Position numbers and translations under genes: made by a program. A model generated the notes under the pieces. It worked only from the letters and a program-made list of their open reading frames with translations. It made no database searches and had not been told where the DNA came from. From NCBI GenBank assembly GCA_946965045.2, contig OX337229.1, positions 5,642,001 through 5,706,000 of the forward strand: a stretch of 64,000 bases of DNA, written 5' to 3'. Positions 45,316 through 55,709 of the stretch are shown piece by piece; within the stretch, counting starts at the first letter, position 1; each line of letters begins with the position of its first letter. Origin of the DNA: Epithemia pelagica. Lineage: Eukaryota > Protista > Bacillariophyta.

Positions 45316-46692
45316 CTAGAGATCGGAGGGCATGGTACCCAACTCAAACGACAAGTTCTTTCCATAAACCGTCGTTCGCAACTGGGAAATGACATCCATT
45401 CCCAAAATGTTCACCTCATTGTTGGTGGTGGTGGTGTCCCCGGATACTAACAAGTGCGCTTCGACCGCAAAGGGAAAGTCGGCCAACTTGACAATCAGCG
45501 ATTCCGGTAGTTTTGTCGTCCGAGTGGTGGTGGCTGTGGTGGGTGTTGTTGCATCCGAATTGCCTGAAGAGTGTTCCAGTAATACCTCCATGGCTTCTTG
45601 GCACAGATACGTGTTGGGGGAAACCATGTCGCAGAGAAAAATAACATTAAAGGAAGGATAACTGGGACCATCAATGAGACGGCTGCGACGGCGCGTGACA
45701 ATGTTCACCATTAACCGCTTGTGGGGACCATGCAAGACACCGGAAATGGGGGATTGTTGGGGCTGGTCCGCCGCCGACAGGTAGGGCACTTCCAATTCGA
45801 TACTAATTTTCCCATGCAGCGTGTCTGAAGTAATATCCGACAATGGTTGGTGATGGTGGTGTTTAGCATGTGGATCATGATTGGACAGTGTCGACCTGGA
45901 TTTGAGTTCGGCGTTTTGTTGGACCACTTCCCCCGACACTTGTTCCTGGGGACGCTTTTTGGGCAACCGGACACATTTCAAGTTCGTCGCTGCACCATTC
46001 GGGTTGGTAGTAGTGTCCGTAGGCTCCACGGAGTATCCTAGCTCCATGAGGATGGACTGGCACAATGGTACCTTGCGTGCCTTTCGAGAGCCCTTGACTC
46101 CACATCGACTGGCAAACATGCGGAGGAACAGCAGTTCAATGCAATGAATCGGAATGCCCTTGATGGACTTGAGGGCGGTACAAGGAACCGAGGTAGGAAG
46201 ACTCCCTCTTCGTGGTTTCACCACTGGATTGAGTGCCTCGGGTGTCACCTCGACATCTTTCAAGGTGGCAGACTCGATCGGATTGACAGGCCGGGGAACA
46301 TGCGCGTACTTGTCATCGTGTTGTGGTGGTGGTGGTTGTGCCTCGGAAAACTCGGCTTGTGGTGCTGGTGGTGGTGGTTGCTTCGGTGCTGGATCCTGCG
46401 TCGGGTCAACAGTGACAGCGGTGGTGGACGCATGAGTGCCATCGACAGTAGGAACTCCTGTCTCCTGTGATAGTCCTTTGGTTGGGTCCTCCGAGCGAAT
46501 GGGGTCCTCATTCTTATGCTGGTTGGACGAGGTTTCTTGCGGAGGATGGGCAGCACTACTGATTTCACCAATCAAGGATACGTAGGGCGTTGTTGCACCA
46601 TCGTTTTCTTGGGCCTTGGCGGAGGAACCATGGCTGGTAGGTTCCACTAGATGGATCTTGTTGTTGCTATTGTCGTTGTCGTCGAATGGCAT
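45316..46692 (-). CDS. Hypothetical protein: Pro-rich N-terminus, C-terminal retropepsin-like (aspartic protease fold) domain with degenerate active site
   Basis: C-terminal FNVIFLCDMVSPNTYLCQEAM...NILGMDVI mirrors the retropepsin pattern (F-L-x-DTG-S..T.L...ILG.D), with DTG changed to DMV. Confidence 0.55.
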   Translation of the reverse strand: MPFDDNDNSNNKIHLVEPTSHGSSAKAQENDGATTPYVSLIGEISSAAHPPQETSSNQHKNEDPIRSEDPTKGLSQETGVPTVDGTHASTTAVTVDPTQDPAPKQPPPPAPQAEFSEAQPPPPQHDDKYAHVPRPVNPIESATLKDVEVTPEALNPVVKPRRGSLPTSVPCTALKSIKGIPIHCIELLFLRMFASRCGVKGSRKARKVPLCQSILMELGYSVEPTDTTTNPNGAATNLKCVRLPKKRPQEQVSGEVVQQNAELKSRSTLSNHDPHAKHHHHQPLSDITSDTLHGKISIELEVPYLSAADQPQQSPISGVLHGPHKRLMVNIVTRRRSRLIDGPSYPSFNVIFLCDMVSPNTYLCQEAMEVLLEHSSGNSDATTPTTATTTRTTKLPESLIVKLADFPFAVEAHLLVSGDTTTTNNEVNILGMDVISQLRTTVYGKNLSFELGTMPSDL

Positions 46693-46893
46693 GAGAGGGG
46701 AGTGTGTTCTTGCGTTTGCGGGCTTGAAAATGGGCACCAAGAGCGCCTTGCTTGCTTGCTCTACGCTGTTGTTGTGCGGACAGATTTTTGAATTTTCTCC
46801 ATGTACCGCGCCAGGGGCGCGAAGCGCGGGGCACGGCGCACAAGCTACCCGAACCTGAAACTTTGCTTGTGAGCTACACCTCTCGGAGAAGAT

Positions 46894-46915
46894 GCTTTAA
46901 TCAGGGTGTGGAAGT
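46894..46915 (+). repeat. Left TSD (GCTTTAAT) plus left 14-bp TIR of the hAT element
   Basis: Sequence reads gatGCTTTAAT|CAGGGTGTGGAAGT. Confidence 0.97.
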
Positions 46916-47063
46916 TGGAAAATCAGCCATTAGACTTAACTTCCCAACTAATAATTCATTAGACAGTTTACTGTGATGCGACTTGTACCCACTAGTTAAT
47001 ACAACATGTATGATTAACTTAACTTAAACTAATCAAATCACAAAACCACGATACAGAATGAAC

Positions 47064-47280
47064 TTGCAACTAATAGTCTAACACGACTAAGGTACTAACT
47101 TGACTAGATTAAATATGGTTCCAATGAAGAACCTGCAACTTAACTTAGACTAACTTTGAAAGTCGTAGTTTCTTTTCTGAGTCTGCAACTAGACTAAACA
47201 AGTCCAAGTTGCAACTTTGCCCCTTGTAAGTAAACTTCATCCCTCTGTCACCTCCATAGTTACAACTATTAGTTGCAACT
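47064..47280. repeat. Left subterminal repeats (T/C)TGCAACT, including palindrome AGTTGCAACT x2
   Basis: Copies at 47064, 47133, 47183, 47209 and 47273. Full palindromes at 47207-47216 and 47271-47280. Confidence 0.85.
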
Positions 47281-47606
47281 TCTTTGTTGTCGTAGTCACA
47301 AACAACAACTTTTATTCAGAGGAACCATTCACTCTTATCTGTTTCTACGTATTTATTCACACTCTTCCTGCACATATTTACCAATATCACTCCCAGAGGA
47401 GTAGAACGTTCACGACTCACGACAGAGGTTCAACCAACACTCACAACTCTCAACCTCTCAACATTCACCAATCCACTGTCACCTGTCACCTTTACCTTTG
47501 TTCCTTTCCATCAACGACACAACCTTCAGTTTTCCTGCCCTTCTCATTTCTCATTGCCACTATTATTTCCCCATCCTCAACCCCATGCATCTTATATTCA
47601 AGTACA

Positions 47607-49448
47607 ATGGAAGCATCAGATGACCGTACCATCAACCTCGATGTGACTTGTCACCAAGTCATCACTGTGACCCATATTCCAATGTCGTTCATGACCATGA
47701 TGCTAGAGGACTCAACTTTGCTAACCACTCCCTTGGAAAAGGCGACACAAGACTTGGCAATGGAGAACATAAAAGATGTGGTGTTGCTGTGGCTTACCCG
47801 GTACAATGGAAGTCTGCACTACCAACAAGTCGACTATCCATCCAACACAAGCCACCCTTGTTTATCTCCCAGTCGCATGTCATTCGAAAGCTTACTGAAC
47901 ACTGTCTGTCGAATAGTGTTTACGGGTCTGTATTCCCAAGAAGATGACTCATTCCAAGTCACATACGAGATGAACCCCCCCACCGACGACCTCCCCTTCA
48001 TCTCCATTGAAGGAAAATGCCGACCAATATTTTCTTTGCCTTCCTCCAATGGTCTCAGAGCATTTCAAAAATTCAATGCCGATTACCATCAGCAAAACAA
48101 CTACACTAAACTTTCCGTGGAATGGAATCTTCTAACCTGGATGACCCGACACAATGCCAGAATCCAGGTTAGAAATTCCTTTGACCTACGGACAGAGTGT
48201 CCTATTTGTATTAGTCCAAGCATCGACATCGTTGTTGAGGACATTGTTGCGCATACTAAGAAGAGCACGAAGGAGGATGACCGTTACTCAATGAAACTGG
48301 ATACAACAACGTCCCCTCCTCCTATTGATACAAGTCCTCCATCAACTCCAGTTGCCAAAGCTTCTCAATCTACCATGGGCCCAAATAGCAACAACGCTTC
48401 TACTTCTGTCACCCATGAATATTGGGCTTCTTCTCCTGTCATTGATGAATATTGGACCAAGCGACAATTTTCCCCCACTGCCCATGTCTTGACTCGGCAA
48501 AGAAAAACTGTTCTCTGCCATGCTTTATTGCAATCATGTTCCGCCAAGGAACAGATAGTCTATGGCGACAGACACATGCCTGGGACACCTGCAATTACCA
48601 AACCTGTCATGACCAGAATGTTTCGCCCTTCCATCCCCATTAGAAACCAATCCACAATTGATTCCCGGCTGTTTTTACTTGATAATCTTTCCCATTTACG
48701 TCGGTATTTCCTTCAGTCTGGTTTGGAAGCCCCCAGAGACACATGGTCCGAATGGATTACCAACAATATGTCGGAATATGAAGACTCTGACCCAGCCTTC
48801 ATGTGTCTCATTGTTATCTTGATGAGCTCGGCCACATCAGATCAAAGTCTCTCTCAAGTGATCCCTCGCTTATTCCAATCGGGCATCACTAGTGCACAAG
48901 GAACAATTGAAGTGTCTACATATTTTGGGATGGATGTTTTCTGTACTTTGTTTGCAGAAACAGGACGGTATCGTGTCAATGCGGAACGCATAGTCAACGC
49001 CGCGGACTATTTCGTCCAGCGACACAAAGGTCGCATTCCTAAAGACATTTCCCTTACTGAGCTTATGACCTTACCTGGAATTGGCCACAAGACGGGAACA
49101 ATCATTCTACAAACGGCATTTGGCCGGACGGAAGGAATTCCCTCAGATATTCATGTTATCCGATCAACTAAGGTTCTCAATTGGACGGAGTCTCATATCA
49201 ATGACGGCATGGAATGCTCTTTGAACCTTCAATCATGGCTTCCTAAAGAACGATGGGAGGAAATCAATCCTTTATTTGGTTCACTAGGACAACTACTTAA
49301 CAAATCACAGACCAGAAGCAAGTGCCAAGAACAAATGGAGTCTTTTATTGTGGCTCACTCTCATGACAAATCCGAATCTAAATCTCCAGCGAATCTTCGC
49401 CATCTCAAGTATTTCTTTCTGCAGTTGATAAAAGAATATACTAAATGA
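47607..49448 (+). CDS. Transposon-borne endonuclease III (Nth/NTHL1)-like HhH-GPD DNA glycosylase/AP lyase with ~400-aa novel N-terminal region; no 4Fe-4S cluster motif
   Basis: FMCLIVILMSSATSD, HhH motif LMTLPGIGHKTG (catalytic Lys at 49089-49091), GIPSDIHVIR (catalytic Asp at 49146-49148), and LQSWLPKERWEEINPLFGSLGQ. The C-x6-C-x2-C-x5-C motif is absent. Confidence 0.88.
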   Translation: MEASDDRTINLDVTCHQVITVTHIPMSFMTMMLEDSTLLTTPLEKATQDLAMENIKDVVLLWLTRYNGSLHYQQVDYPSNTSHPCLSPSRMSFESLLNTVCRIVFTGLYSQEDDSFQVTYEMNPPTDDLPFISIEGKCRPIFSLPSSNGLRAFQKFNADYHQQNNYTKLSVEWNLLTWMTRHNARIQVRNSFDLRTECPICISPSIDIVVEDIVAHTKKSTKEDDRYSMKLDTTTSPPPIDTSPPSTPVAKASQSTMGPNSNNASTSVTHEYWASSPVIDEYWTKRQFSPTAHVLTRQRKTVLCHALLQSCSAKEQIVYGDRHMPGTPAITKPVMTRMFRPSIPIRNQSTIDSRLFLLDNLSHLRRYFLQSGLEAPRDTWSEWITNNMSEYEDSDPAFMCLIVILMSSATSDQSLSQVIPRLFQSGITSAQGTIEVSTYFGMDVFCTLFAETGRYRVNAERIVNAADYFVQRHKGRIPKDISLTELMTLPGIGHKTGTIILQTAFGRTEGIPSDIHVIRSTKVLNWTESHINDGMECSLNLQSWLPKERWEEINPLFGSLGQLLNKSQTRSKCQEQMESFIVAHSHDKSESKSPANLRHLKYFFLQLIKEYTK

Positions 49449-49550
49449 CTGTCAATATATTATATTTACCAAAATGCACTGCGATTATGAATGTATAGTT
49501 TCCGTGACGTTTCTTCCATTGTCACCTTCAATGACGTTCGTGGTCGGAGA

Positions 49551-52500
49551 TCAACTGGTACCGTCATTGTCCGCACTTGAGACTTCCTTCTCTGCAAGTC
49601 TTGGGCTTCTTCTCGTTGGCGAGTCGTTTGGGGTTGGGGGTGGTTTGCGATTGTCTTTCTTGCGTGGTGTTCTAACCACAGTTCTTGCGAGTGCCTCAGA
49701 GAGTGAATTCTGCTTCGTCCGTTTCCTTCCTTTTTGAATAGTTGAAGAGGCTTTACGTTTCCCACTATCTCCTTTCTTGCCTTCATTGGCATTTGCAACG
49801 GGCAGACTAGCAACAGTCTTCTCCAACGCGGTTTGTTGAATGAGTTCATTCTTTCTTTCCTGGATGGCTTCTTTTAACGCCGTGTCAGAATCTTCCTTGT
49901 CTTCGTCATCGTCGTAAGGAGCAACAACTTTTCGATCCAAAGCCTCTAGTTGATCTTCATCTCGTGGATCGTCTACCAGATCAACCAATTCGACGTCGTC
50001 CCATGTCGCATCGCTCACAACTGTCTTCTTATCAACCTTTTTGACCGACTTGAACTTGTAACTTGTTTCCGCCTCTATGCCGTGGGCACCAATAGTTCCG
50101 GACAGTTCGTAGAGTTCCAGCTTCGACGTTGCTCGTAGTACCGTTTCCATCCGAGTCATATCGGATTGTGTCGGTGTGGCTTTTTCCAGTGGGACAACAG
50201 GAACTTGTGTTCCTGCTGCCGGGGTGCGTTGTTGTGCGGTCTGTTGTACCTGACTGACTTCTTCCCCTTTAGATTCCTGGCTGAGATCTATCACCTTCTT
50301 TGCTTGGCGGCCACTGGCTGCCTGTTTTTCGTCGGAGGTCGCGCCTTGTTTGAGTAGCTTCTCATTCTTGACAATCTCAGAGCGCACCTCCCTTGTAATA
50401 CTTTCCATAGTGCGCATTTCAAAGTTCTTGTCAAGTTGGCGTCTCATTAAGGGATTCCTATCCATGAACGACGACCGAGAGAACACGCGTTCCTGGAATG
50501 CGTTTGTCGCAGGTTTCGATATCCAAATCAAGGCACTAGGAAAGAGTTTGGGGAATAGCATCTTGTTGTCGGACCACCATTTCAAGACGTCAAAATATTT
50601 CCCAACGACATGGAAATAGTGTTCCGTACAGGCCAACTTGAATTCTTGTTGTTTTTCAGGGTTCCACGAACCAGATAGTTTCAGAAATGCGGCAGTGGGA
50701 TACTGGCGAATCAAGTCCTCCCAGGATCCATGGACAACGTTCTCGCAAAATTCGAGATAGCGTCCGAACTGTTCATCACACATCTTGTATAGCTTGGCTC
50801 TATCAACTTGGTCATCTGTACTGGTACTTGTCGCCGTCGCCTCCATTAGTGCAGCATTTTCTTTCTCCTTGGTGATGCGATGTGTCTTGAAGATGTTAAA
50901 GCAGTCCATTACATTCGTGACAGCTTTTGGGACTGAAGGCTCTTCCTCTTCGTCCTCGATGATCTCCACAGGTGTACTTTCCTTTTGTTGTTCACGTTCC
51001 TGCTGATTCGACTTGGATTGGGGATTGGTGCCATTCTTCTTTGGCTGCGAGAACTTGCGGACAATGTCCATCACAAATTCTTTCCGAATCCGTTTAAGAC
51101 TCTCATCGTCGTAAACATTTATGGTTTTCAGTATGTTGGGACCATAAGATGCAAGGAAAGGATGTCCACACATGGCGTGTTCAGCGTGGGAGTCATGGCC
51201 TTCCTCAATGTAGTTTGTATATTCCACAAGTACTCGCTCGATCAACAATTGACTCTTTTCTGACAATTTGTCGTATGTTACAATGTCTCGATACGATTGA
51301 AGCTTGGCGATGGTGAGACTGGCATCCCATGGGCGTGCATTAGGCCCAGTAACAGTCAACACGGGCACTCCCTTATCTTTCATAACTTCCACACAATGCT
51401 TGCTGGTGAAGATTTCCAGCAATGAACAAGCCGATGCAGAAGGGTCGTCAACTTGGAGTGACATGGAGACTTGTTTGAGTGGGGCCAAGATTCCCTCGAA
51501 TTCGGCCAAGAGCTGCCAGTCCTCTTCAGAGGGATAATGTTTAATGAATTCGTCGTCCTTGTACTCAAATTGCTCTTTTGCATACATATCCGTTACAAAT
51601 TTGTTCCGGAATAGGTCATGAAAGGTAATGATGCAGCCTCCAACACGGGTTGTATTCGGCATAGAGACTTTGATGACCTTCCTCCCATGTTTTAGGGCGT
51701 AGGAACGTAGCTTTTCAAATCTTTTGGCACGCGAACTCATCATCCATGCTGCAAATTTGAAGAATTTTCTATAAACAGTCATGAATTCCTCGTTACTGTC
51801 CACCACTTCGCCTTTTTTTTTCCGGACTGCCAGACCTGTGGAGTGTTTCAAGATCAGTTCGGCCCTGTGCATGTCGCACTTGCCGCCTGTCTTATTACCC
51901 ACTATATACTTTCCAGCCAACACGGCGGAGTTCGTGTTGTCATTCACGGAGGCAGAGAGGTCTTGTTGCGTAAAGCCGACAGCGTTGAGGATTGATGAGG
52001 TGTGGTCGGCTACTTGTTTTGCTGTATGACCCTTTGTTGAGCAAAGGCCAATCGGGAGTCTGTAAGATTTACAGTTCCGAGGATCGGTGAACATCAAACA
52101 AACCCCAAGGACATCCTTGTCATTTCCCTGCCAGATGTCGTGTGTTATCGTAGAAAAGGCGATGGGTTTGTTGCATAGATCATGGTACGCTTGTCGTACG
52201 TTTTCTCCAAGTTCCGTAACGGTCTTGAGAAAATCATTGTAGGACTCCAATCTCATCCGAGTGATTGCTTTGTTGCTTATGGAACAGTCCTTTTCCTTGA
52301 GCTTTGGGGCGTTGGCAATTGCACACTTAAGAAGATCTCTAAACGATTCCTTCTCAACAGTTGATGCCGGGAAACCACAGTCATTCACGAACTTATAAAT
52401 TGACTGATGAAACATTACTCTGGCATCTTGTTTGCTAACCATTGTGCCAGAATACATGGAAATGGGTTGTTGAGTAGGGTCGGTTGCAACAGAGGCAGTA

Positions 52501-53216
52501 TCTTCCACGACTTCGGGGTGGTATTTACCAAAGTGTTTGCTGATGTTGGACGAAAGGCCTCTGCCAAGACCAAGGAGACATTTGTCGAGACTAACAGTCG
52601 GGTCGTCGAAGCAATGTGGACAAACAACAAGCTTCTTTACAATGGAATGATAGCCATCGTTCATTTCTTTGTCTTCATCAGAAGCTGACTCTAACAATTG
52701 CAGACACGAAAATAAACCTGGCATTTTCCCCAAATTGACAGCGGGGTTTGATTTTAAGGTCTTCTTCGTGCTGGTCAATTTCTTGAAGTTCAGGTAACGA
52801 ACTTTTCCAAAGAACGAATTTTGGAAATTTCGAAAGAGCTTCTTCGGAGGTGGACAAAACGAGACATATGATTTCTCTTGTTTGATTTCATCCTTTCGGC
52901 TTTGTGTCAAGGGTCCCTCGTCCGTAGGAGCAGGAGCAGCAACTTGTTGAGAGTTGTCTTCATTGTTGGCTGTTGTAGGAGGCGCCTGGTTTTCATTTTC
53001 TCTTTCATTGGTTGTTGTCGGTGGGTTCGTGGGTTCTTCATTGTTGTCGTCACCTCCAGTTGCTGACGATAGTCGAGCTTCTTTGGAGGATTGAGATGAC
53101 TGCCGTTGATTCTTTCTTTGGGGAGCCATGGCATACATGAATGTCGCTGATGAAAGACTGGAAACAGCAGGGGAGTTCAAATCTACTTCAATGTCCTCGA
53201 TTGGCAACAAAGACAT
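49551..53216 (-). CDS. hAT-family transposase (BED-like zinc finger, DDE core, C-terminal dimerisation domain), 1221 aa, uninterrupted
   Basis: CPHC...KHFGKYH zinc finger, THDIW (D1), NDNTNSA (D2), CDMH (CxxH), KWWSDNKMLFPKL, and ATNAFQERVFS (E). Confidence 0.95.
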   Translation of the reverse strand: MSLLPIEDIEVDLNSPAVSSLSSATFMYAMAPQRKNQRQSSQSSKEARLSSATGGDDNNEEPTNPPTTTNERENENQAPPTTANNEDNSQQVAAPAPTDEGPLTQSRKDEIKQEKSYVSFCPPPKKLFRNFQNSFFGKVRYLNFKKLTSTKKTLKSNPAVNLGKMPGLFSCLQLLESASDEDKEMNDGYHSIVKKLVVCPHCFDDPTVSLDKCLLGLGRGLSSNISKHFGKYHPEVVEDTASVATDPTQQPISMYSGTMVSKQDARVMFHQSIYKFVNDCGFPASTVEKESFRDLLKCAIANAPKLKEKDCSISNKAITRMRLESYNDFLKTVTELGENVRQAYHDLCNKPIAFSTITHDIWQGNDKDVLGVCLMFTDPRNCKSYRLPIGLCSTKGHTAKQVADHTSSILNAVGFTQQDLSASVNDNTNSAVLAGKYIVGNKTGGKCDMHRAELILKHSTGLAVRKKKGEVVDSNEEFMTVYRKFFKFAAWMMSSRAKRFEKLRSYALKHGRKVIKVSMPNTTRVGGCIITFHDLFRNKFVTDMYAKEQFEYKDDEFIKHYPSEEDWQLLAEFEGILAPLKQVSMSLQVDDPSASACSLLEIFTSKHCVEVMKDKGVPVLTVTGPNARPWDASLTIAKLQSYRDIVTYDKLSEKSQLLIERVLVEYTNYIEEGHDSHAEHAMCGHPFLASYGPNILKTINVYDDESLKRIRKEFVMDIVRKFSQPKKNGTNPQSKSNQQEREQQKESTPVEIIEDEEEEPSVPKAVTNVMDCFNIFKTHRITKEKENAALMEATATSTSTDDQVDRAKLYKMCDEQFGRYLEFCENVVHGSWEDLIRQYPTAAFLKLSGSWNPEKQQEFKLACTEHYFHVVGKYFDVLKWWSDNKMLFPKLFPSALIWISKPATNAFQERVFSRSSFMDRNPLMRRQLDKNFEMRTMESITREVRSEIVKNEKLLKQGATSDEKQAASGRQAKKVIDLSQESKGEEVSQVQQTAQQRTPAAGTQVPVVPLEKATPTQSDMTRMETVLRATSKLELYELSGTIGAHGIEAETSYKFKSVKKVDKKTVVSDATWDDVELVDLVDDPRDEDQLEALDRKVVAPYDDDEDKEDSDTALKEAIQERKNELIQQTALEKTVASLPVANANEGKKGDSGKRKASSTIQKGRKRTKQNSLSEALARTVVRTPRKKDNRKPPPTPNDSPTRRSPRLAEKEVSSADNDGTS

Positions 53217-53452
53217 GTGCTTTCAACCAGAGATTGGTTGTTTGATTCCGACAGTGTCAACTGGAAAAATCACACCTCATTCGTGTGCTGTAACGCTGCA
53301 ACAGAGGTGAAGAGATTGTGTGTTGGGTTCAGTGTTAAGAGGTAAGAAAGAGGTAAGGGGCCAGTACCGATTATATCTTGTTGACTGTGTTTGTTACTGT
53401 AGGATAGTGCGAAGTGACCAAGTGTCAAGTGTCGACAGTCGACACTGACACT

Positions 53453-53775
53453 AGTTGCAATGAAGTAAAATTACAACTTGATTTGGAGAATTTAGTTCTA
53501 ATCTTGAGACTTGCAATTAGACTTCAGACTTCGAGTCACTAAGTGGAGACATGTAACTTGATTGAACTATGTGAGAAAATTGCAACTTGGATAATTACAT
53601 TGGTGTGTGCCAATGTTCCGGTAATCAGAGCTTGTAAATAACTAAGTTGGATGGGTCCAAGTCAAGTTCGATGAAAAATGTGAGCAATTTGACTTTGTGA
53701 AAAAAGTTCGTTTGAGAAAGGCTAGTAATGTGATTTGATTTGTGAAATTATGGTGAAAAAGTTCAAAAGTTGCAG
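53453..53775. repeat. Right subterminal repeats AGTTGCA(A/G)/TTGCAACT
   Basis: AGTTGCAA at 53453, TTGCAACT at 53580 and AGTTGCAG at 53768. Confidence 0.75.
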
Positions 53776-53799
53776 AACTTAGAAAATTTTTCGCTAGTG

Positions 53800-53821
53800 A
53801 CTTCCACACCCTGGCTTTAAT
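53800..53821 (-). repeat. Right 14-bp TIR plus right TSD (GCTTTAAT) of the hAT element
   Basis: Sequence reads ACTTCCACACCCTG|GCTTTAAT. Confidence 0.97.
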
Positions 53822-54028
53822 GCTTTAGTATGATGGTCCGTTGTCCATCTCACACAAGTCATCATGAATGCCCTCCAATAATATCTAGAGTGGCAATGAT
53901 GTTGGACAGCGTACAAAAAGAAAAAAGAACTATTAATACTATTGCAGTAAGCTTGTGGATAAAAAGGGTCCCCCGAATGATGATGATGAGTAAACGAAAC
54001 ACACACAGATTTGCCGGAATCACGCGCG

Positions 54029-55709
54029 CTATGGCTCGTAACGCCCCGATGTAGCAGCCGGGTTGCCACAACTCTTCAAATCCACCACCACGACCGAAAA
54101 GTTGTCGGCGGAACCACACGATCGGGCATGTTCACACAAATTCCGCGCGGCCCACTTGAACCGGTTCGTGTCAATTTGGAGTCGTCCATCTTCCATGGCA
54201 CAGGACGAGGCAATCACTACATGTGCCGCTTCCTCATTGTCCATGACATCCCACACACCATCGCTCGAAAGAATCAAGAACCAATCATCTTTGCCAATAT
54301 CGTATTCACAAATCTCAGGTTCTGCTGTTATGTAGGGTTTGAGAGAGGCATCTCCCACACTTCGAGACACAGCCAGGAGTCCTTCTACTCGCCATCGGCC
54401 CCAGTATATCACTCGGCCTCCCAGTTCGGATATTCGTCTTGTTTCATCGGGTATTCCGGGCTTGTGGTCGCGAGACAATCGGACAATGGATCCATCTCGG
54501 CGTACCACAATGGCTCTGGAATCTCCTGCGTTGGAGCATACCACCCGTCGACCTCCGACAATGGATACCGCGCAGGCAGTCGATCCATCCGTTTGTCCCG
54601 AATTGACAAAGTCCTTGTCAACCGTTGTAAAAGCATTCTTCATGGAGTACCCCAAGTCGTAGGGGTACGAAGAGTCGCTTCGAATATAGGAAGACATCCA
54701 ATCCGCGCAAAACTGACTGGCCTTGTCACCACCATGACCATCAAACACGCCGCAAAACGTCAGCGGCATGGTTATGCGCCTCGATTGTTTTGGTCCATAG
54801 GTCACTTCCACATCTTCGGATTCGGACTTTACAGCCACCGGGCTGACCTCGACTTGAACTGCATCCATGTCTTCAATCGCATACCTGGAAAAACAAAGAG
54901 TGCAAATGTTAGACACAATCACGACGCAATGTGCGGAAACAGTCCAGAACTAGCGAAACATACCTGTCTTCCATGTAGGCTCGTCCTCCAGCATCACTCC
55001 AATGGCTCACATTGAGGTGCACATTGTTGGGCCGCAGTTCCCTGCGCTCCATGACGGATGGACCTATTGGTTGGCGCTCCGAGCCGTCCGTGACGGACGA
55101 TCGAAGCGAGTATCGAACAATCGCAGCGTTTCGAGGCAGAGAGGGTGGAAGTTGGCCATAGGGATCGCCCATATCGGACGCCAGTGGCGATGGTGGTGAA
55201 GTTAACACAGTGTCTTCTTCCTCCTCATCCTCCACTTCAGAATCTTTGTGGCGTATGCTTTTCCGCGAAAGAAGGAAATTCGGTACTCCCATACATGTTC
55301 TAGAACCAGATCCCACTTTAGCTTTGAGACAATGTTGGCGGTAGCTCTCCCCTGGATCAGAATCATAAGGATCAATTTCATCTTCCTCCTCTTCCTCGTC
55401 CTTCTTCTTTTGTTTGTTGTTGCGCAAGCGATTCTTCCGCTGCTCTTTGGAAGCGGCGGCATTGGATTCCTCTGCGTATTCCTTTTGCGCTCGTGCTTCC
55501 TTTCTCCTCCTTCTTTGTTCCCACATGGAGGATAGTGAATTTCGTCGAGTGGTACTCTGTTCTCGGCTCTCGTCTTCGTCCTCCTCACTGCGGATGGGGG
55601 AGGGTGTCACCCGGCTGCGTCGAGCACCAATGGTGTCTTTCTCAACAAGAGGTGCCTCGCGAAAAGCGGATTGGGCCGCATTATAATCGGATCGATACGC
55701 TAGTGACAT
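54029..55709 (-). CDS. PP2C (PPM) family Ser/Thr protein phosphatase with charged N-terminal extension; 2 exons
   Basis: Exons 55709-54964 and 54884-54029 join as GGRAYMEDR|YAIE. Motifs GVFDGHGG, DGSTAC, NAGDSRA, DHKP, LAVSRSVGD, SSDGVWDV and GSADN. Confidence 0.94.

What the first reader, a model, noticed from the sequence alone, without database searches (positions are those of the whole stretch)
46902..53813. Intact hAT transposon carrying its own endonuclease III-type DNA glycosylase: a candidate self-protective (anti-silencing or repair) transposon system
Seen in the sequence: perfect 14-bp TIRs starting CAGGG, a perfect 8-bp TSD, an uninterrupted DDE transposase, and a second intact 613-aa gene between the TIRs. 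The two genes converge with a gap of only 102 bp, so each promoter sits in an element end. The cargo has the HhH-GPD catalytic Lys and Asp with the same 19-residue spacing as human NTH1. Established: hAT elements usually encode only a transposase. HhH-GPD enzymes with a catalytic Lys are bifunctional glycosylase/AP lyases, a superfamily that includes the plant 5mC demethylases ROS1/DEMETER. Diatom TEs are CG-methylated (DNMT5 in Phaeodactylum), and TE-encoded anti-silencing factors exist (Arabidopsis VANDAL VANC). Inference: the cargo may remove methylated or damaged bases from the element, or process hairpin/AP intermediates at donor sites. I know of no description of an hAT-Nth module.
Basis: partly seen in the sequence, partly recalled or inferred. 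Interest (0 to 1): 0.93.

Follow-up and report, generated by a model that had tools for sequence, protein, structure and literature searches.

The report
Jumping gene with own DNA glycosylase
This alga has a recently active cut-and-paste jumping gene that, through many long-separated lineages, has kept a second gene for a predicted DNA base-removing repair enzyme, which may erase silencing marks or damage on the element, though its job is untested.

Summary
Observation confirmed. Window 46902-53813 is a 6912-bp hAT transposon with perfect 14-bp TIRs and a perfect 8-bp TSD. It carries two intact convergent genes 102 bp apart: a 613-aa HhH-GPD protein and a 1221-aa hAT transposase.

The element moves as a unit. 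A 98.7% copy elsewhere ends exactly at the TIRs with its own TSD. Public reads hold the precise empty site with one TSD copy.

The glycosylase is not a one-off capture. Eight further elements in this genome, and one in a sediment metagenome, share the two-gene layout. Their proteins are down to 34% identical and synonymous sites are saturated. The glycosylase and transposase trees have the same topology.

The enzyme is nearest NTHL1/endonuclease III, and its catalytic Lys and Asp are invariant. It lacks the Fe-S motif and has an internally duplicated N-terminal domain with no fold match.

Function is inferred only. My best guess is base excision on the element's own DNA, against methylation-type silencing or its mutational after-effects. 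No RNA data were obtainable.

I found no published TE-borne HhH-GPD glycosylase. The closest analogue is fungal transposons carrying TET/JBP. This scan already reported the same family on other pieces of this genome (s1-226339, s1-232827).

The parts
46894..46901 (.). Left target-site duplication GCTTTAAT
   Evidence: Identical to 53814-53821. The empty-site contig in run X1 holds a single copy.
46902..46915 (+). Left terminal inverted repeat CAGGGTGTGGAAGT
   Evidence: 14/14 complementary to 53800-53813. The same 14-mer bounds the diverged elements in L001, L002 and L003. Public contigs of the element start exactly at 46902.
46916..47606 (+). Left subterminal non-coding region with AAGTTGCA repeats (47134, 47206, 47210, 47274). 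Presumed transposase-binding sites and promoter of the glycosylase gene.
   Evidence: 6 of the 7 AAGTTGCA matches in the 64-kb window lie in the element's two non-coding ends. Other subfamilies have their own AAGT-core subterminal repeats. The promoter role is inferred.
47607..48272 (+). Glycosylase gene, residues 1-222: internally duplicated N-terminal domain (two modules of about 110 aa) of unknown fold family
   Evidence: AlphaFold2 model has pLDDT 88, pTM 0.76. hhalign of the two halves gives probability 97.7%, E 9e-12. No match in PDB, AFDB clusters, VIA-wide, ESM Atlas or Pfam.
48273..48719 (+). Glycosylase gene, residues 223-371: low-confidence linker, then a conserved motif around residues 296-335 (invariant T296 R297, Y319, R322 H323, G326, P333) and a helix leading into the catalytic domain
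   Evidence: pLDDT is below 50 for residues 219-319. The invariant columns are listed.
48720..49304 (+). Glycosylase gene, residues 372-566: HhH-GPD catalytic domain. HhH motif LPGIGHKT; Lys495 codon at 49089-49091; Asp514 codon at 49146-49148. No Fe-S motif.
   Evidence: Pfam HhH-GPD. NCBIfam nth E 1.7e-21, below the equivalog cut-off. NTHL1 7rdt E 4e-19. Foldseek to NTHL1/EndoIII gives TM by target 0.64-0.70. K495 and D514 are invariant. No C-x6-C-x2-C-x5-C motif.
47607..49448 (+). Whole glycosylase-like ORF, 613 aa plus stop
   Evidence: Identical protein P0213 sits on a 603,889-nt contig of assembly ERZ21939226.
49449..49550 (.). 102-bp spacer between the two convergent stop codons
49551..53216 (-). 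hAT transposase ORF, 1221 aa. Invariant CxxC...H....H (C199, C202, H228, H233; 52518-52622). Candidate catalytic D360 (52137-52139), D426 (51939-51941), E909 (50490-50492). hAT dimerisation block at residues 873-915 (50472-50600).
   Evidence: Pfam PF05699 28.3 bits, cut-off 21.4. Hermes transposase aligns over the block holding E909. Invariant columns across 7 subfamilies. Coordinates.
53217..53799 (-). Right subterminal non-coding region with AAGTTGCA repeats (53581, 53767). Presumed promoter of the transposase gene.
   Evidence: Most other copies in runs X1-X3 carry a 10-bp insertion behind 53301. The promoter role is inferred.
53800..53813 (-). Right terminal inverted repeat
   Evidence: Public element contigs end exactly at 53813.
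53814..53821 (.). Right target-site duplication GCTTTAAT

Best explanation
Shown:
- This is a structurally intact member of a hAT-superfamily transposon lineage. The copy has both ORFs, both TIRs and a TSD, and its site is polymorphic.
- The element carries two conserved genes in convergent orientation between short CAGGG-type TIRs: the transposase, and an Nth-like HhH-GPD protein.
- The two genes have been inherited together through deep diversification of the lineage.

Inferred from sequence:
- The second protein is an active bifunctional DNA glycosylase/AP lyase. It has an invariant Schiff-base Lys and an invariant catalytic Asp in an endonuclease III/NTHL1-like fold.
- It has lost the Fe-S cluster and gained a duplicated N-terminal domain. 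That domain probably supplies targeting, either to the element's AAGT-core subterminal repeats or to the transposase.

Inferred mechanism (my best guess, untested):
- The enzyme removes a base from the element's own DNA to keep the element active.
- The most likely substrate is methylated cytosine, or an oxidised or deaminated product of it, so that host base-excision repair restores unmodified C.
- This would counter methylation-based silencing and/or its mutational decay. It would parallel the role proposed for the TET/JBP genes of fungal DNA transposons.
For: Element and mobility:
- TIRs and TSD.
- Copy L002 is 98.7% identical over exactly 46902-53813 and has its own TSD, CTTCTCAC.
- The empty site carries one GCTTTAAT in runs X1-X3. 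Element word depth is about 1000 against about 144 in the flanks.
- L007 and L008 are one element at two loci, 3 differences in 6798 bp, each with its own TSD.

Conserved module:
- Convergent glycosylase plus hAT pairs with an exact 8-bp TSD in L001, L003 inner, L003 outer, L005, L007 and L008. L004 has 7 of 8 TSD positions.
- The same pair sits in sediment-metagenome contig L013 with CAGGGTTAYGAAGT termini.
- The gene trees of 7 elements have identical topology.
- pS is about 0.8 (saturated) against pN 0.23-0.47.
- 31 family catalytic domains form a clade with SH-aLRT 99 among the 96 nearest other HhH-GPD proteins, out of a 1.8-billion-protein library.

Enzyme:
- K495 and D514 are invariant.
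- NTHL1 E 4e-19 with identical Lys-Asp spacing. Foldseek TM by target 0.64-0.70 to NTHL1/EndoIII.

Context for the silencing idea:
- DNMT5-dependent methylation represses TEs in the diatom Phaeodactylum (PMC9998398).
- Transposon-borne TET/JBP, including in hAT7 elements, is proposed to counter methylation (PMC12730594).
- In the window versus L002 comparison, CpG sites take 9 of 39 substitutions against 7.5% expected, p 0.002. This hints that the copies are CpG-methylated.
Against: - No activity, substrate or expression data exist. No RNA run could be listed.
- Sequence places the domain nearest Nth enzymes, whose known substrates are oxidised pyrimidines, not 5mC.
- The DME/ROS1 hallmarks (Fe-S cluster, DME-specific domains) are absent.
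- The Gln of the NTHL1 SSQTKD motif is Ala/Ser/Asn here, so specificity cannot be read off.
- The CpG-biased substitution signal was not reproduced against the read consensus (4 of 28). CpG o/e of the elements (0.69-0.76) is only mildly below the flanks and close to GpC o/e.
- Targeting by the N-terminal domain is pure inference.
- Whether related hAT subfamilies without the glycosylase exist (for example the 205-member cluster P0195) is unknown.
Confidence: 0.45

Rival explanations
1. Transposition-coupled repair factor. The glycosylase/AP-lyase acts on DNA intermediates of hAT transposition, not on epigenetic marks. Candidate sites are donor-site breaks, the 8-nt gaps at the new insertion, or lesions near the ends. 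Its nicking or lyase activity would channel repair, for instance toward homology-directed refilling of the donor site, which would raise copy number.
For: - The gene is retained and co-diverges with the transposase in every element examined. That pattern is expected of a protein needed for the transposition cycle itself.
- The Nth-like fold with an AP-lyase Lys gives strand-cleaving chemistry.
- Precedents exist for nuclease-type second genes in DNA transposons, for example KolobokP with a His-Me endonuclease (PMC9587614).
Against: - Known hAT elements transpose with the transposase alone, and the flank hairpins they form are not glycosylase substrates (established knowledge of Hermes/Ac, not tested here).
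- No base lesion is an obligatory intermediate of DDE chemistry.
- No data here link the enzyme to ends or junctions.
Confidence: 0.2
2. Non-catalytic partner protein. The second protein serves mainly as a DNA-binding or architectural cofactor, like the Myb-like protein of PIF/Harbinger. It would bring the transposase to the subterminal repeats or into the nucleus, with the HhH-GPD fold used only to grip DNA.
For: - The large duplicated N-terminal domain is conserved (invariant W62 and W178).
- Each subfamily has its own subterminal repeats.
- Two-protein DNA transposons of this logic are known (own knowledge).
Against: - The Schiff-base Lys, the catalytic Asp and the HhH glycines are invariant across sequences as low as about 30% identical. 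They are present in all full catalytic domains of the family. That is not expected for a purely structural role.
- The C-terminal catalytic half is the more conserved half (pN 0.23-0.37 against 0.37-0.58 for the N-terminal half).
Confidence: 0.12
3. Passive passenger. This would be a recent accidental capture of the host NTH1 gene by one hAT copy, with no function for the element.
For: DNA transposons do sometimes capture host gene fragments (general knowledge). The domain's nearest solved relatives are cellular Nth enzymes.
Against: - The gene is present in all ten elements examined, across subfamilies whose proteins are 34-51% identical.
- Its tree is congruent with the transposase tree.
- The ORFs are intact despite saturated synonymous sites.
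- The family forms a distinct clade with a private N-terminal domain and no Fe-S cluster.
Confidence: 0.02

Closest known systems
Fungal DNA transposons encoding TET/JBP dioxygenases, including hAT7 families (PMC12730594)
   Same: Both are cut-and-paste DNA transposons, some of them hAT. Both carry, inside the TIRs and beside the transposase, a gene for an enzyme that acts on DNA bases. A role in escaping methylation-based silencing is proposed for both and shown for neither.
   Different: - The enzyme class differs: an HhH-GPD glycosylase/lyase here, a 2OG-Fe(II) dioxygenase there.
- The host group differs.
- In fungi the TET/JBP gene hops between transposon superfamilies. Here the gene co-diverges strictly with one hAT lineage.
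- The TSD is 8 bp here and 7 bp in hAT7.
Endonuclease III / human NTHL1 (PDB 7rdt, 2abk, 1orn)
   Same: Best sequence and fold match for residues about 372-566. The HhH motif, the catalytic Lys and Asp, and their 19-residue spacing are all shared.
   Different: - No 4Cys Fe-S cluster motif.
- The score is far below the NCBIfam nth equivalog cut-off, 76.8 against 211.7 bits.
- There is about 370 aa of extra N-terminal sequence with a duplicated novel domain.
- It is encoded by a transposon.
- The Gln of the SSQTKD motif is replaced.
Plant 5-methylcytosine glycosylases DEMETER/ROS1
   Same: Same HhH-GPD superfamily, with a catalytic Lys and Asp, so bifunctional chemistry is expected. A role against methylation is conceivable.
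   Different: - DME/ROS1 have an Fe-S cluster, a split glycosylase domain and DME-specific C-terminal domains. None was detected here.
- No specific sequence affinity was seen; Nth proteins score best.
- 5mC excision is untested.
VANDAL (Mutator-like) elements with the anti-silencing protein VANC (PMC5735166)
   Same: Both have a TE-encoded accessory protein, separate from the transposase, that is thought to act on the element's own copies. Here, diverging subfamilies also have their own cis repeats.
   Different: VANC is a sequence-specific DNA-binding protein without known enzymatic activity, and its effect on methylation is shown experimentally. Here the protein is a predicted enzyme and no effect has been shown.
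Two-gene DNA transposons: PIF/Harbinger (transposase plus Myb-like protein) and KolobokP (transposase plus His-Me endonuclease, PMC9587614)
   Same: A second conserved ORF is inherited with the transposase inside the TIRs.
   Different: The superfamily differs, and the second protein is of a different kind. hAT elements are normally single-gene (own knowledge).

Membership tests
hAT superfamily of DNA transposons | 8-bp target-site duplication | tested here: met
   The window copy and eight further elements have exact 8-bp TSDs. The empty site holds one copy.
hAT superfamily of DNA transposons | Short TIRs fitting 5'-YARNG (consensus from own knowledge) | tested here: met
   The 14-bp TIR begins CAGGG. 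Related termini occur in all subfamilies.
hAT superfamily of DNA transposons | Transposase with the hAT C-terminal dimerisation domain (PF05699) | tested here: met
   28.3 bits against a cut-off of 21.4. Hermes transposase aligns over this block.
hAT superfamily of DNA transposons | RNase-H-like DDE catalytic core with an inserted domain | tested here: inconclusive
   D360 (HDIWQ), D426 (NDNTN) and E909 (QERVFS) are invariant across 7 subfamilies. Only the E-containing block aligns to a solved hAT transposase. No structure model was made of the transposase.
hAT superfamily of DNA transposons | Target preference nTnnnnAn (own knowledge of Ac/hobo/Hermes) | tested here: met
   T at position 2 in 6 of 8 exact TSDs and A at position 7 in 7 of 8. 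The sample is small.
HhH-GPD superfamily of DNA glycosylases | HhH-GPD fold with a helix-hairpin-helix and a Gly/Pro-rich loop followed by a catalytic Asp | tested here: met
   Pfam 26.3 bits against a 26.2 cut-off, which is borderline. PDB profile E 4e-19. Foldseek TM by target 0.64-0.70. D514 is invariant.
Endonuclease III (Nth) family proper | Catalytic Lys in the HhH motif (bifunctional glycosylase/AP lyase) | tested here: met
   K495 is invariant and aligned to the NTHL1 Lys.
Endonuclease III (Nth) family proper | C-terminal [4Fe-4S] cluster, Cys-x6-Cys-x2-Cys-x5-Cys | tested here: not met
   The motif is absent from all family sequences and present in many of the non-family hits.
Endonuclease III (Nth) family proper | Score above the NCBIfam nth equivalog cut-off | tested here: not met
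   76.8 bits against 211.7. The family is a separate clade with SH-aLRT 99.
DEMETER/ROS1 5mC glycosylases | Fe-S cluster and DME-specific domains flanking a split glycosylase domain | tested here: not met
   No Fe-S motif. Pfam finds only HhH-GPD at E up to 0.01.
DEMETER/ROS1 5mC glycosylases | Excision of 5-methylcytosine | not testable with these tools
   Needs an enzyme assay.
TE-encoded anti-silencing systems (VANC; TET/JBP-bearing transposons) | The accessory gene lies inside the element and is mobilised with it | tested here: met
   Two copies with different TSDs both contain the gene. The empty site lacks it.
TE-encoded anti-silencing systems (VANC; TET/JBP-bearing transposons) | Reduces methylation or silencing of cognate copies | not testable with these tools
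   No methylation or RNA data were obtainable. CpG statistics were inconclusive.

The most novel reading that the evidence does not exclude
A whole lineage of hAT transposons in diatom-type algae encodes its own 5-methylcytosine-directed (or 5mC-derivative-directed) DNA glycosylase. A novel duplicated N-terminal domain would aim it at the element. That would make it a transposon-borne active demethylase, evolved from an Nth-like enzyme independently of plant DEMETER/ROS1, and used as a counter-defence against DNMT5-type silencing.
Probability: 0.25. Interest if true: 0.92.

Novelty: new variant of a known kind. Interest (0 to 1): 0.78.

Why it matters
hAT elements are textbook single-gene transposons. 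Here a lineage has kept a second, enzyme-coding gene through deep diversification and is still moving.

If the enzyme edits bases on the element, it would be the first transposon-encoded DNA glycosylase. It would also be a second, independent route (beside TET/JBP) by which DNA transposons carry machinery against methylation-based silencing. And it would lie in a major group of marine algae where no demethylation pathway is characterised, to my knowledge.

The finding makes a concrete question testable with one recombinant protein and one knock-in experiment. It also supplies a compact, Fe-S-free Nth-like enzyme with a new putative targeting domain, and a structurally intact, possibly autonomous hAT that could serve as a genetic tool in diatoms.

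Tried and rejected
- **RNA evidence.** Two searches for RNA runs listed only three DNA-type runs and then none. Transcription is therefore untested.
- **Numerical dN/dS between subfamilies.** Not computable because pS is 0.78-0.92, which is saturated. I report only pN well below pS. The window versus L002 pair has too few changes (4 synonymous, 5 non-synonymous).
- **CpG depletion as a methylation proxy.** Element CpG o/e is 0.69-0.76 against 0.83-1.04 in the flanks, but GpC o/e is similar. Uninformative.
- **CpG-biased substitutions.** Significant in window versus L002 (9 of 39, p 0.002). Not significant against the read consensus (4 of 28) or in L007 versus L008 (1 of 3). Kept as a weak lead only.
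- **Fold of the N-terminal domain.**
  - Foldseek PDB, AFDB clusters, VIA-wide, ESM Atlas and Pfam gave nothing above noise.
  - Weak winged-helix/HTH-like pieces (Z up to 4.8) and diatom DUF6824 (TM about 0.3) are leads, not matches.
  - An Atlas feature hit to HORMA/ATG13 at 0.34 is noise.
- **More distant HhH-GPD protein P0049 (L012).** Its neighbours are not hAT-like, so it gives no support for a wider association.
- **Organism identity.** The neighbouring PP2C protein gave no diatom-specific signal.
- **Solved hAT structures.** Only the C-terminal block aligns, so the DDE triad is assigned by motif only.
Full report
**1. The observation**

The region is exactly as described.
- A 14-bp inverted repeat, CAGGGTGTGGAAGT, sits at 46902-46915 and 53800-53813 with 14 of 14 complementarity. 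With up to two mismatches the only other match in the 64-kb window is an internal 2-mismatch site.
- The eight bases outside each end are both GCTTTAAT.
- Between the ends lie two long ORFs: a plus-strand ORF whose first ATG gives 613 aa (47607-49448), and a minus-strand ORF of 1221 aa (49551-53216).
- The stop codons are 102 bp apart.
- G+C drops from about 0.50 in the flanks to 0.37-0.47 inside the element.

**2. It is a mobile unit**

- A locus from assembly ERZ21939226 (L002) matches the window at 98.7% over exactly 46902-53813 and nowhere else. It is flanked by its own perfect 8-bp duplication, CTTCTCAC.
- The window's two proteins are identical to P0213 and P0232, which lie on a 603,889-nt contig of the same assembly. 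L001-L008 are therefore other places in this genome.
- In public runs X1-X3, a 4216-nt contig covers window 46600-46901 at its positions 1491-1792 and window 53814-54600 at its positions 1785-2571. The two flanks overlap by one 8-bp GCTTTAAT, which is the precise empty site. These runs behave as DNA runs, with contigs up to 0.5 Mb.
- Element contigs in those runs start at 46902 and stop at 53813. Their word depth is about seven times that of the flanks (about 1000 against about 144), and other flanks appear as loose ends. This indicates several near-identical copies elsewhere.
- In X2 and X3 the flank contigs break within about 30 nt of the junction. I cannot tell whether the filled and empty states are two alleles of one strain or a difference between strains.
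- The window and L002 copies differ by 39 substitutions and 5 indel events, spread evenly over coding and non-coding parts. Two indels break the transposase in L002. The window copy has both ORFs intact.
- At least 6 of 15 listed glycosylase variants and 3 of 15 listed transposase variants of this subfamily are full length.

**3. The transposase**

- Pfam finds the hAT dimerisation domain above its cut-off.
- Hermes transposase is the only solved relative, and it aligns only over the block that holds E909.
- An alignment of seven subfamily transposases shows invariant C199, C202, H228 and H233 (BED-like). It also shows invariant D360, D426 and E909 in hAT-like motif contexts.
- The 8-bp TSD, the CAGGG terminus and the T2/A7 bias of the TSDs also fit hAT.
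- Both non-coding ends carry AAGTTGCA repeats. Six of the seven matches in the window lie in these 1.3 kb. Other subfamilies have their own AAGT-core repeats.

**4. The second gene**

*Catalytic domain (residues about 372-566).*
- The Pfam HhH-GPD hit is borderline, 26.3 against 26.2 bits.
- A family profile hits human NTHL1 at E 4e-19 and bacterial endonuclease III at 1e-11 to 1e-14.
- NCBIfam nth is the best model but scores far below its equivalog cut-off.
- The AlphaFold2 model of this domain matches NTHL1/EndoIII with TM by target 0.64-0.70.
- The HhH glycines, K495 and D514 are invariant in seven sequences that are 30-54% identical to the window protein.
- K495 and D514 align without gaps to the NTHL1 Lys and Asp, 19 residues apart.
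- No family member has the Cys-x6-Cys-x2-Cys-x5-Cys motif, which many of the cellular hits have.
- The Gln of the NTHL1 SSQTKD motif is Ala, Ser or Asn here.

*N-terminal region.*
- Residues 1-222 model confidently with a 19-sequence alignment: pLDDT 88, pTM 0.76.
- They are a tandem duplication of a module of about 110 aa, each with the motif W-L/M-x-R...G/A-x-I. hhalign gives probability 97.7%, E 9e-12.
- No fold or family match was found.
- A low-confidence linker follows. Then comes a short conserved motif (T296 R297 ... Y319 ... R322 H323 x x G326 ... P333), which precedes the catalytic domain.

**5. Not a one-off capture**

- All homologues with genomic context sit convergently beside a hAT transposase of about 1220-1290 aa:
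  - L001 (glycosylase 51% identical to the window's)
  - L003 inner (40%)
  - L004 (34%)
  - L005
  - L007 and L008, which are one element at two loci
  - an outer element in L003, into which the inner one has inserted
.
- Each has CAGGG-type TIRs and an exact 8-bp TSD. L004 has 7 of 8.
- The TIR is letter-identical in the window copy, L001, L002 and L003 inner, although their synonymous sites are saturated.
- An 8.7-kb sediment-metagenome contig (L013) carries the same convergent pair. Its transposase is 42% identical to the window's, and its glycosylase catalytic half 46%. Its termini read CAGGGTTAYGAAGT.
- Short contigs from other samples show a low-complexity convergent ORF stub after the glycosylase stop codon, or a CAGGG-type terminus about 700 bp upstream. 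This is suggestive only.
- Between subfamilies pS is 0.78-0.92 and pN is 0.23-0.58. The catalytic half is the more conserved, and glycosylase and transposase dN run in parallel.
- Maximum-likelihood trees of the two proteins from seven elements have the same topology, with support 88-100.
- A search of 1.84 billion representative proteins found 41 hits below 1e-30, then a drop to generic Nth-like proteins.
- In a tree of the catalytic domain, 31 family sequences form one clade (SH-aLRT 99) among the 96 nearest other HhH-GPD proteins.

**6. Mechanism**

Shown: a two-gene hAT lineage, recently mobile, with both genes under long-term constraint.

Inferred from sequence: an active bifunctional glycosylase/AP lyase.

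Beyond that, nothing here identifies the substrate.
- I favour a role on the element's own DNA connected with cytosine methylation, either erasing the mark or removing its oxidation or deamination products.
- Three things support this. Methylation is the known TE-silencing system of diatoms (PMC9998398). The nearest precedent, TET/JBP genes inside fungal DNA transposons including hAT7, is read the same way (PMC12730594). And one copy pair shows a three-fold excess of substitutions at CpG.
- The support is thin. The CpG signal did not replicate, composition is uninformative, and the domain's nearest relatives act on oxidised pyrimidines.
- The rivals remain open: a transposition-coupled repair function, and a mainly architectural partner. 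The passive-passenger reading is refuted.

**7. Known or new**

- Full-text searches for hAT or transposon terms together with glycosylase, HhH-GPD or endonuclease III found no description of a transposon-encoded HhH-GPD glycosylase.
- Within this scan the same family was already noted on other pieces of this genome. Two follow-ups (s1-226339, s1-232827) reached the same reading. My tests were run independently and agree.
- I class it as a new variant of a known kind: a DNA transposon carrying a DNA-base-modifying or repair enzyme.

Noticed in passing
L003:2301-16710 (outer) and L003:9467-16392 (inner): Nested insertion. One glycosylase-bearing hAT (TIR CAGGGTGTGGAAGT, TSD AGTAGAAT) sits inside another of a different subfamily (TIR CAGGGTTGTGAAGT, TSD CTCATGAC). 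The outer element has a 543-aa HhH-GPD gene and a 1283-aa transposase.
   Followed up: partly
L007:8541-15338 and L008:8541-15338: Two copies of another subfamily at different loci differ by only 3 substitutions in 6798 bp. Each has its own exact TSD (TTGTTCAC, ATTCAGGC). This points to very recent transposition of a second subfamily.
   Followed up: yes
protein cluster P0195: A related hAT transposase cluster (39% identical) has 205 member sequences in the same assembly. That is far more than any glycosylase cluster.
   Followed up: no
window 46740-46901 and 53822-54029: The element lies between two host ORFs. It is about 160 bp upstream of the start of a 474-aa minus-strand ORF (45316-46740), and about 210 bp beyond the stop of a PP2C phosphatase gene (54029-54922, minus strand). 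It probably sits in the promoter region of the 474-aa ORF, and the site is polymorphic (an empty allele exists).
   Followed up: partly
proteins P0050, P0057, P0132: Proteins of about 280-320 aa match only the N-terminal duplicated domain of the family profile. They may be truncated copies or stand-alone versions of that domain.
   Followed up: no
window 53301: Most copies in runs X1-X3 carry a 10-bp insertion (CAAGCCACAG) behind 53301, in the transposase upstream region, that the window copy lacks. About 28 fixed single-base differences separate the window copy from the read consensus.
   Followed up: partly
window 46902-53813 vs L002:9313-16210: Substitutions between the two copies are enriched at CpG sites: 9 of 39 against 7.5% of sites, 7 of them transitions, p 0.002. 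This would fit methylation of the copies, but it was not reproduced in two smaller comparisons.
   Followed up: partly
L004:174-4607 and L005:16231-19782: Copia-type (RVT_2) retrotransposon genes lie within a few kb of two of the hAT elements. Their CpG o/e values differ strongly (0.71 and 1.17).
   Followed up: no
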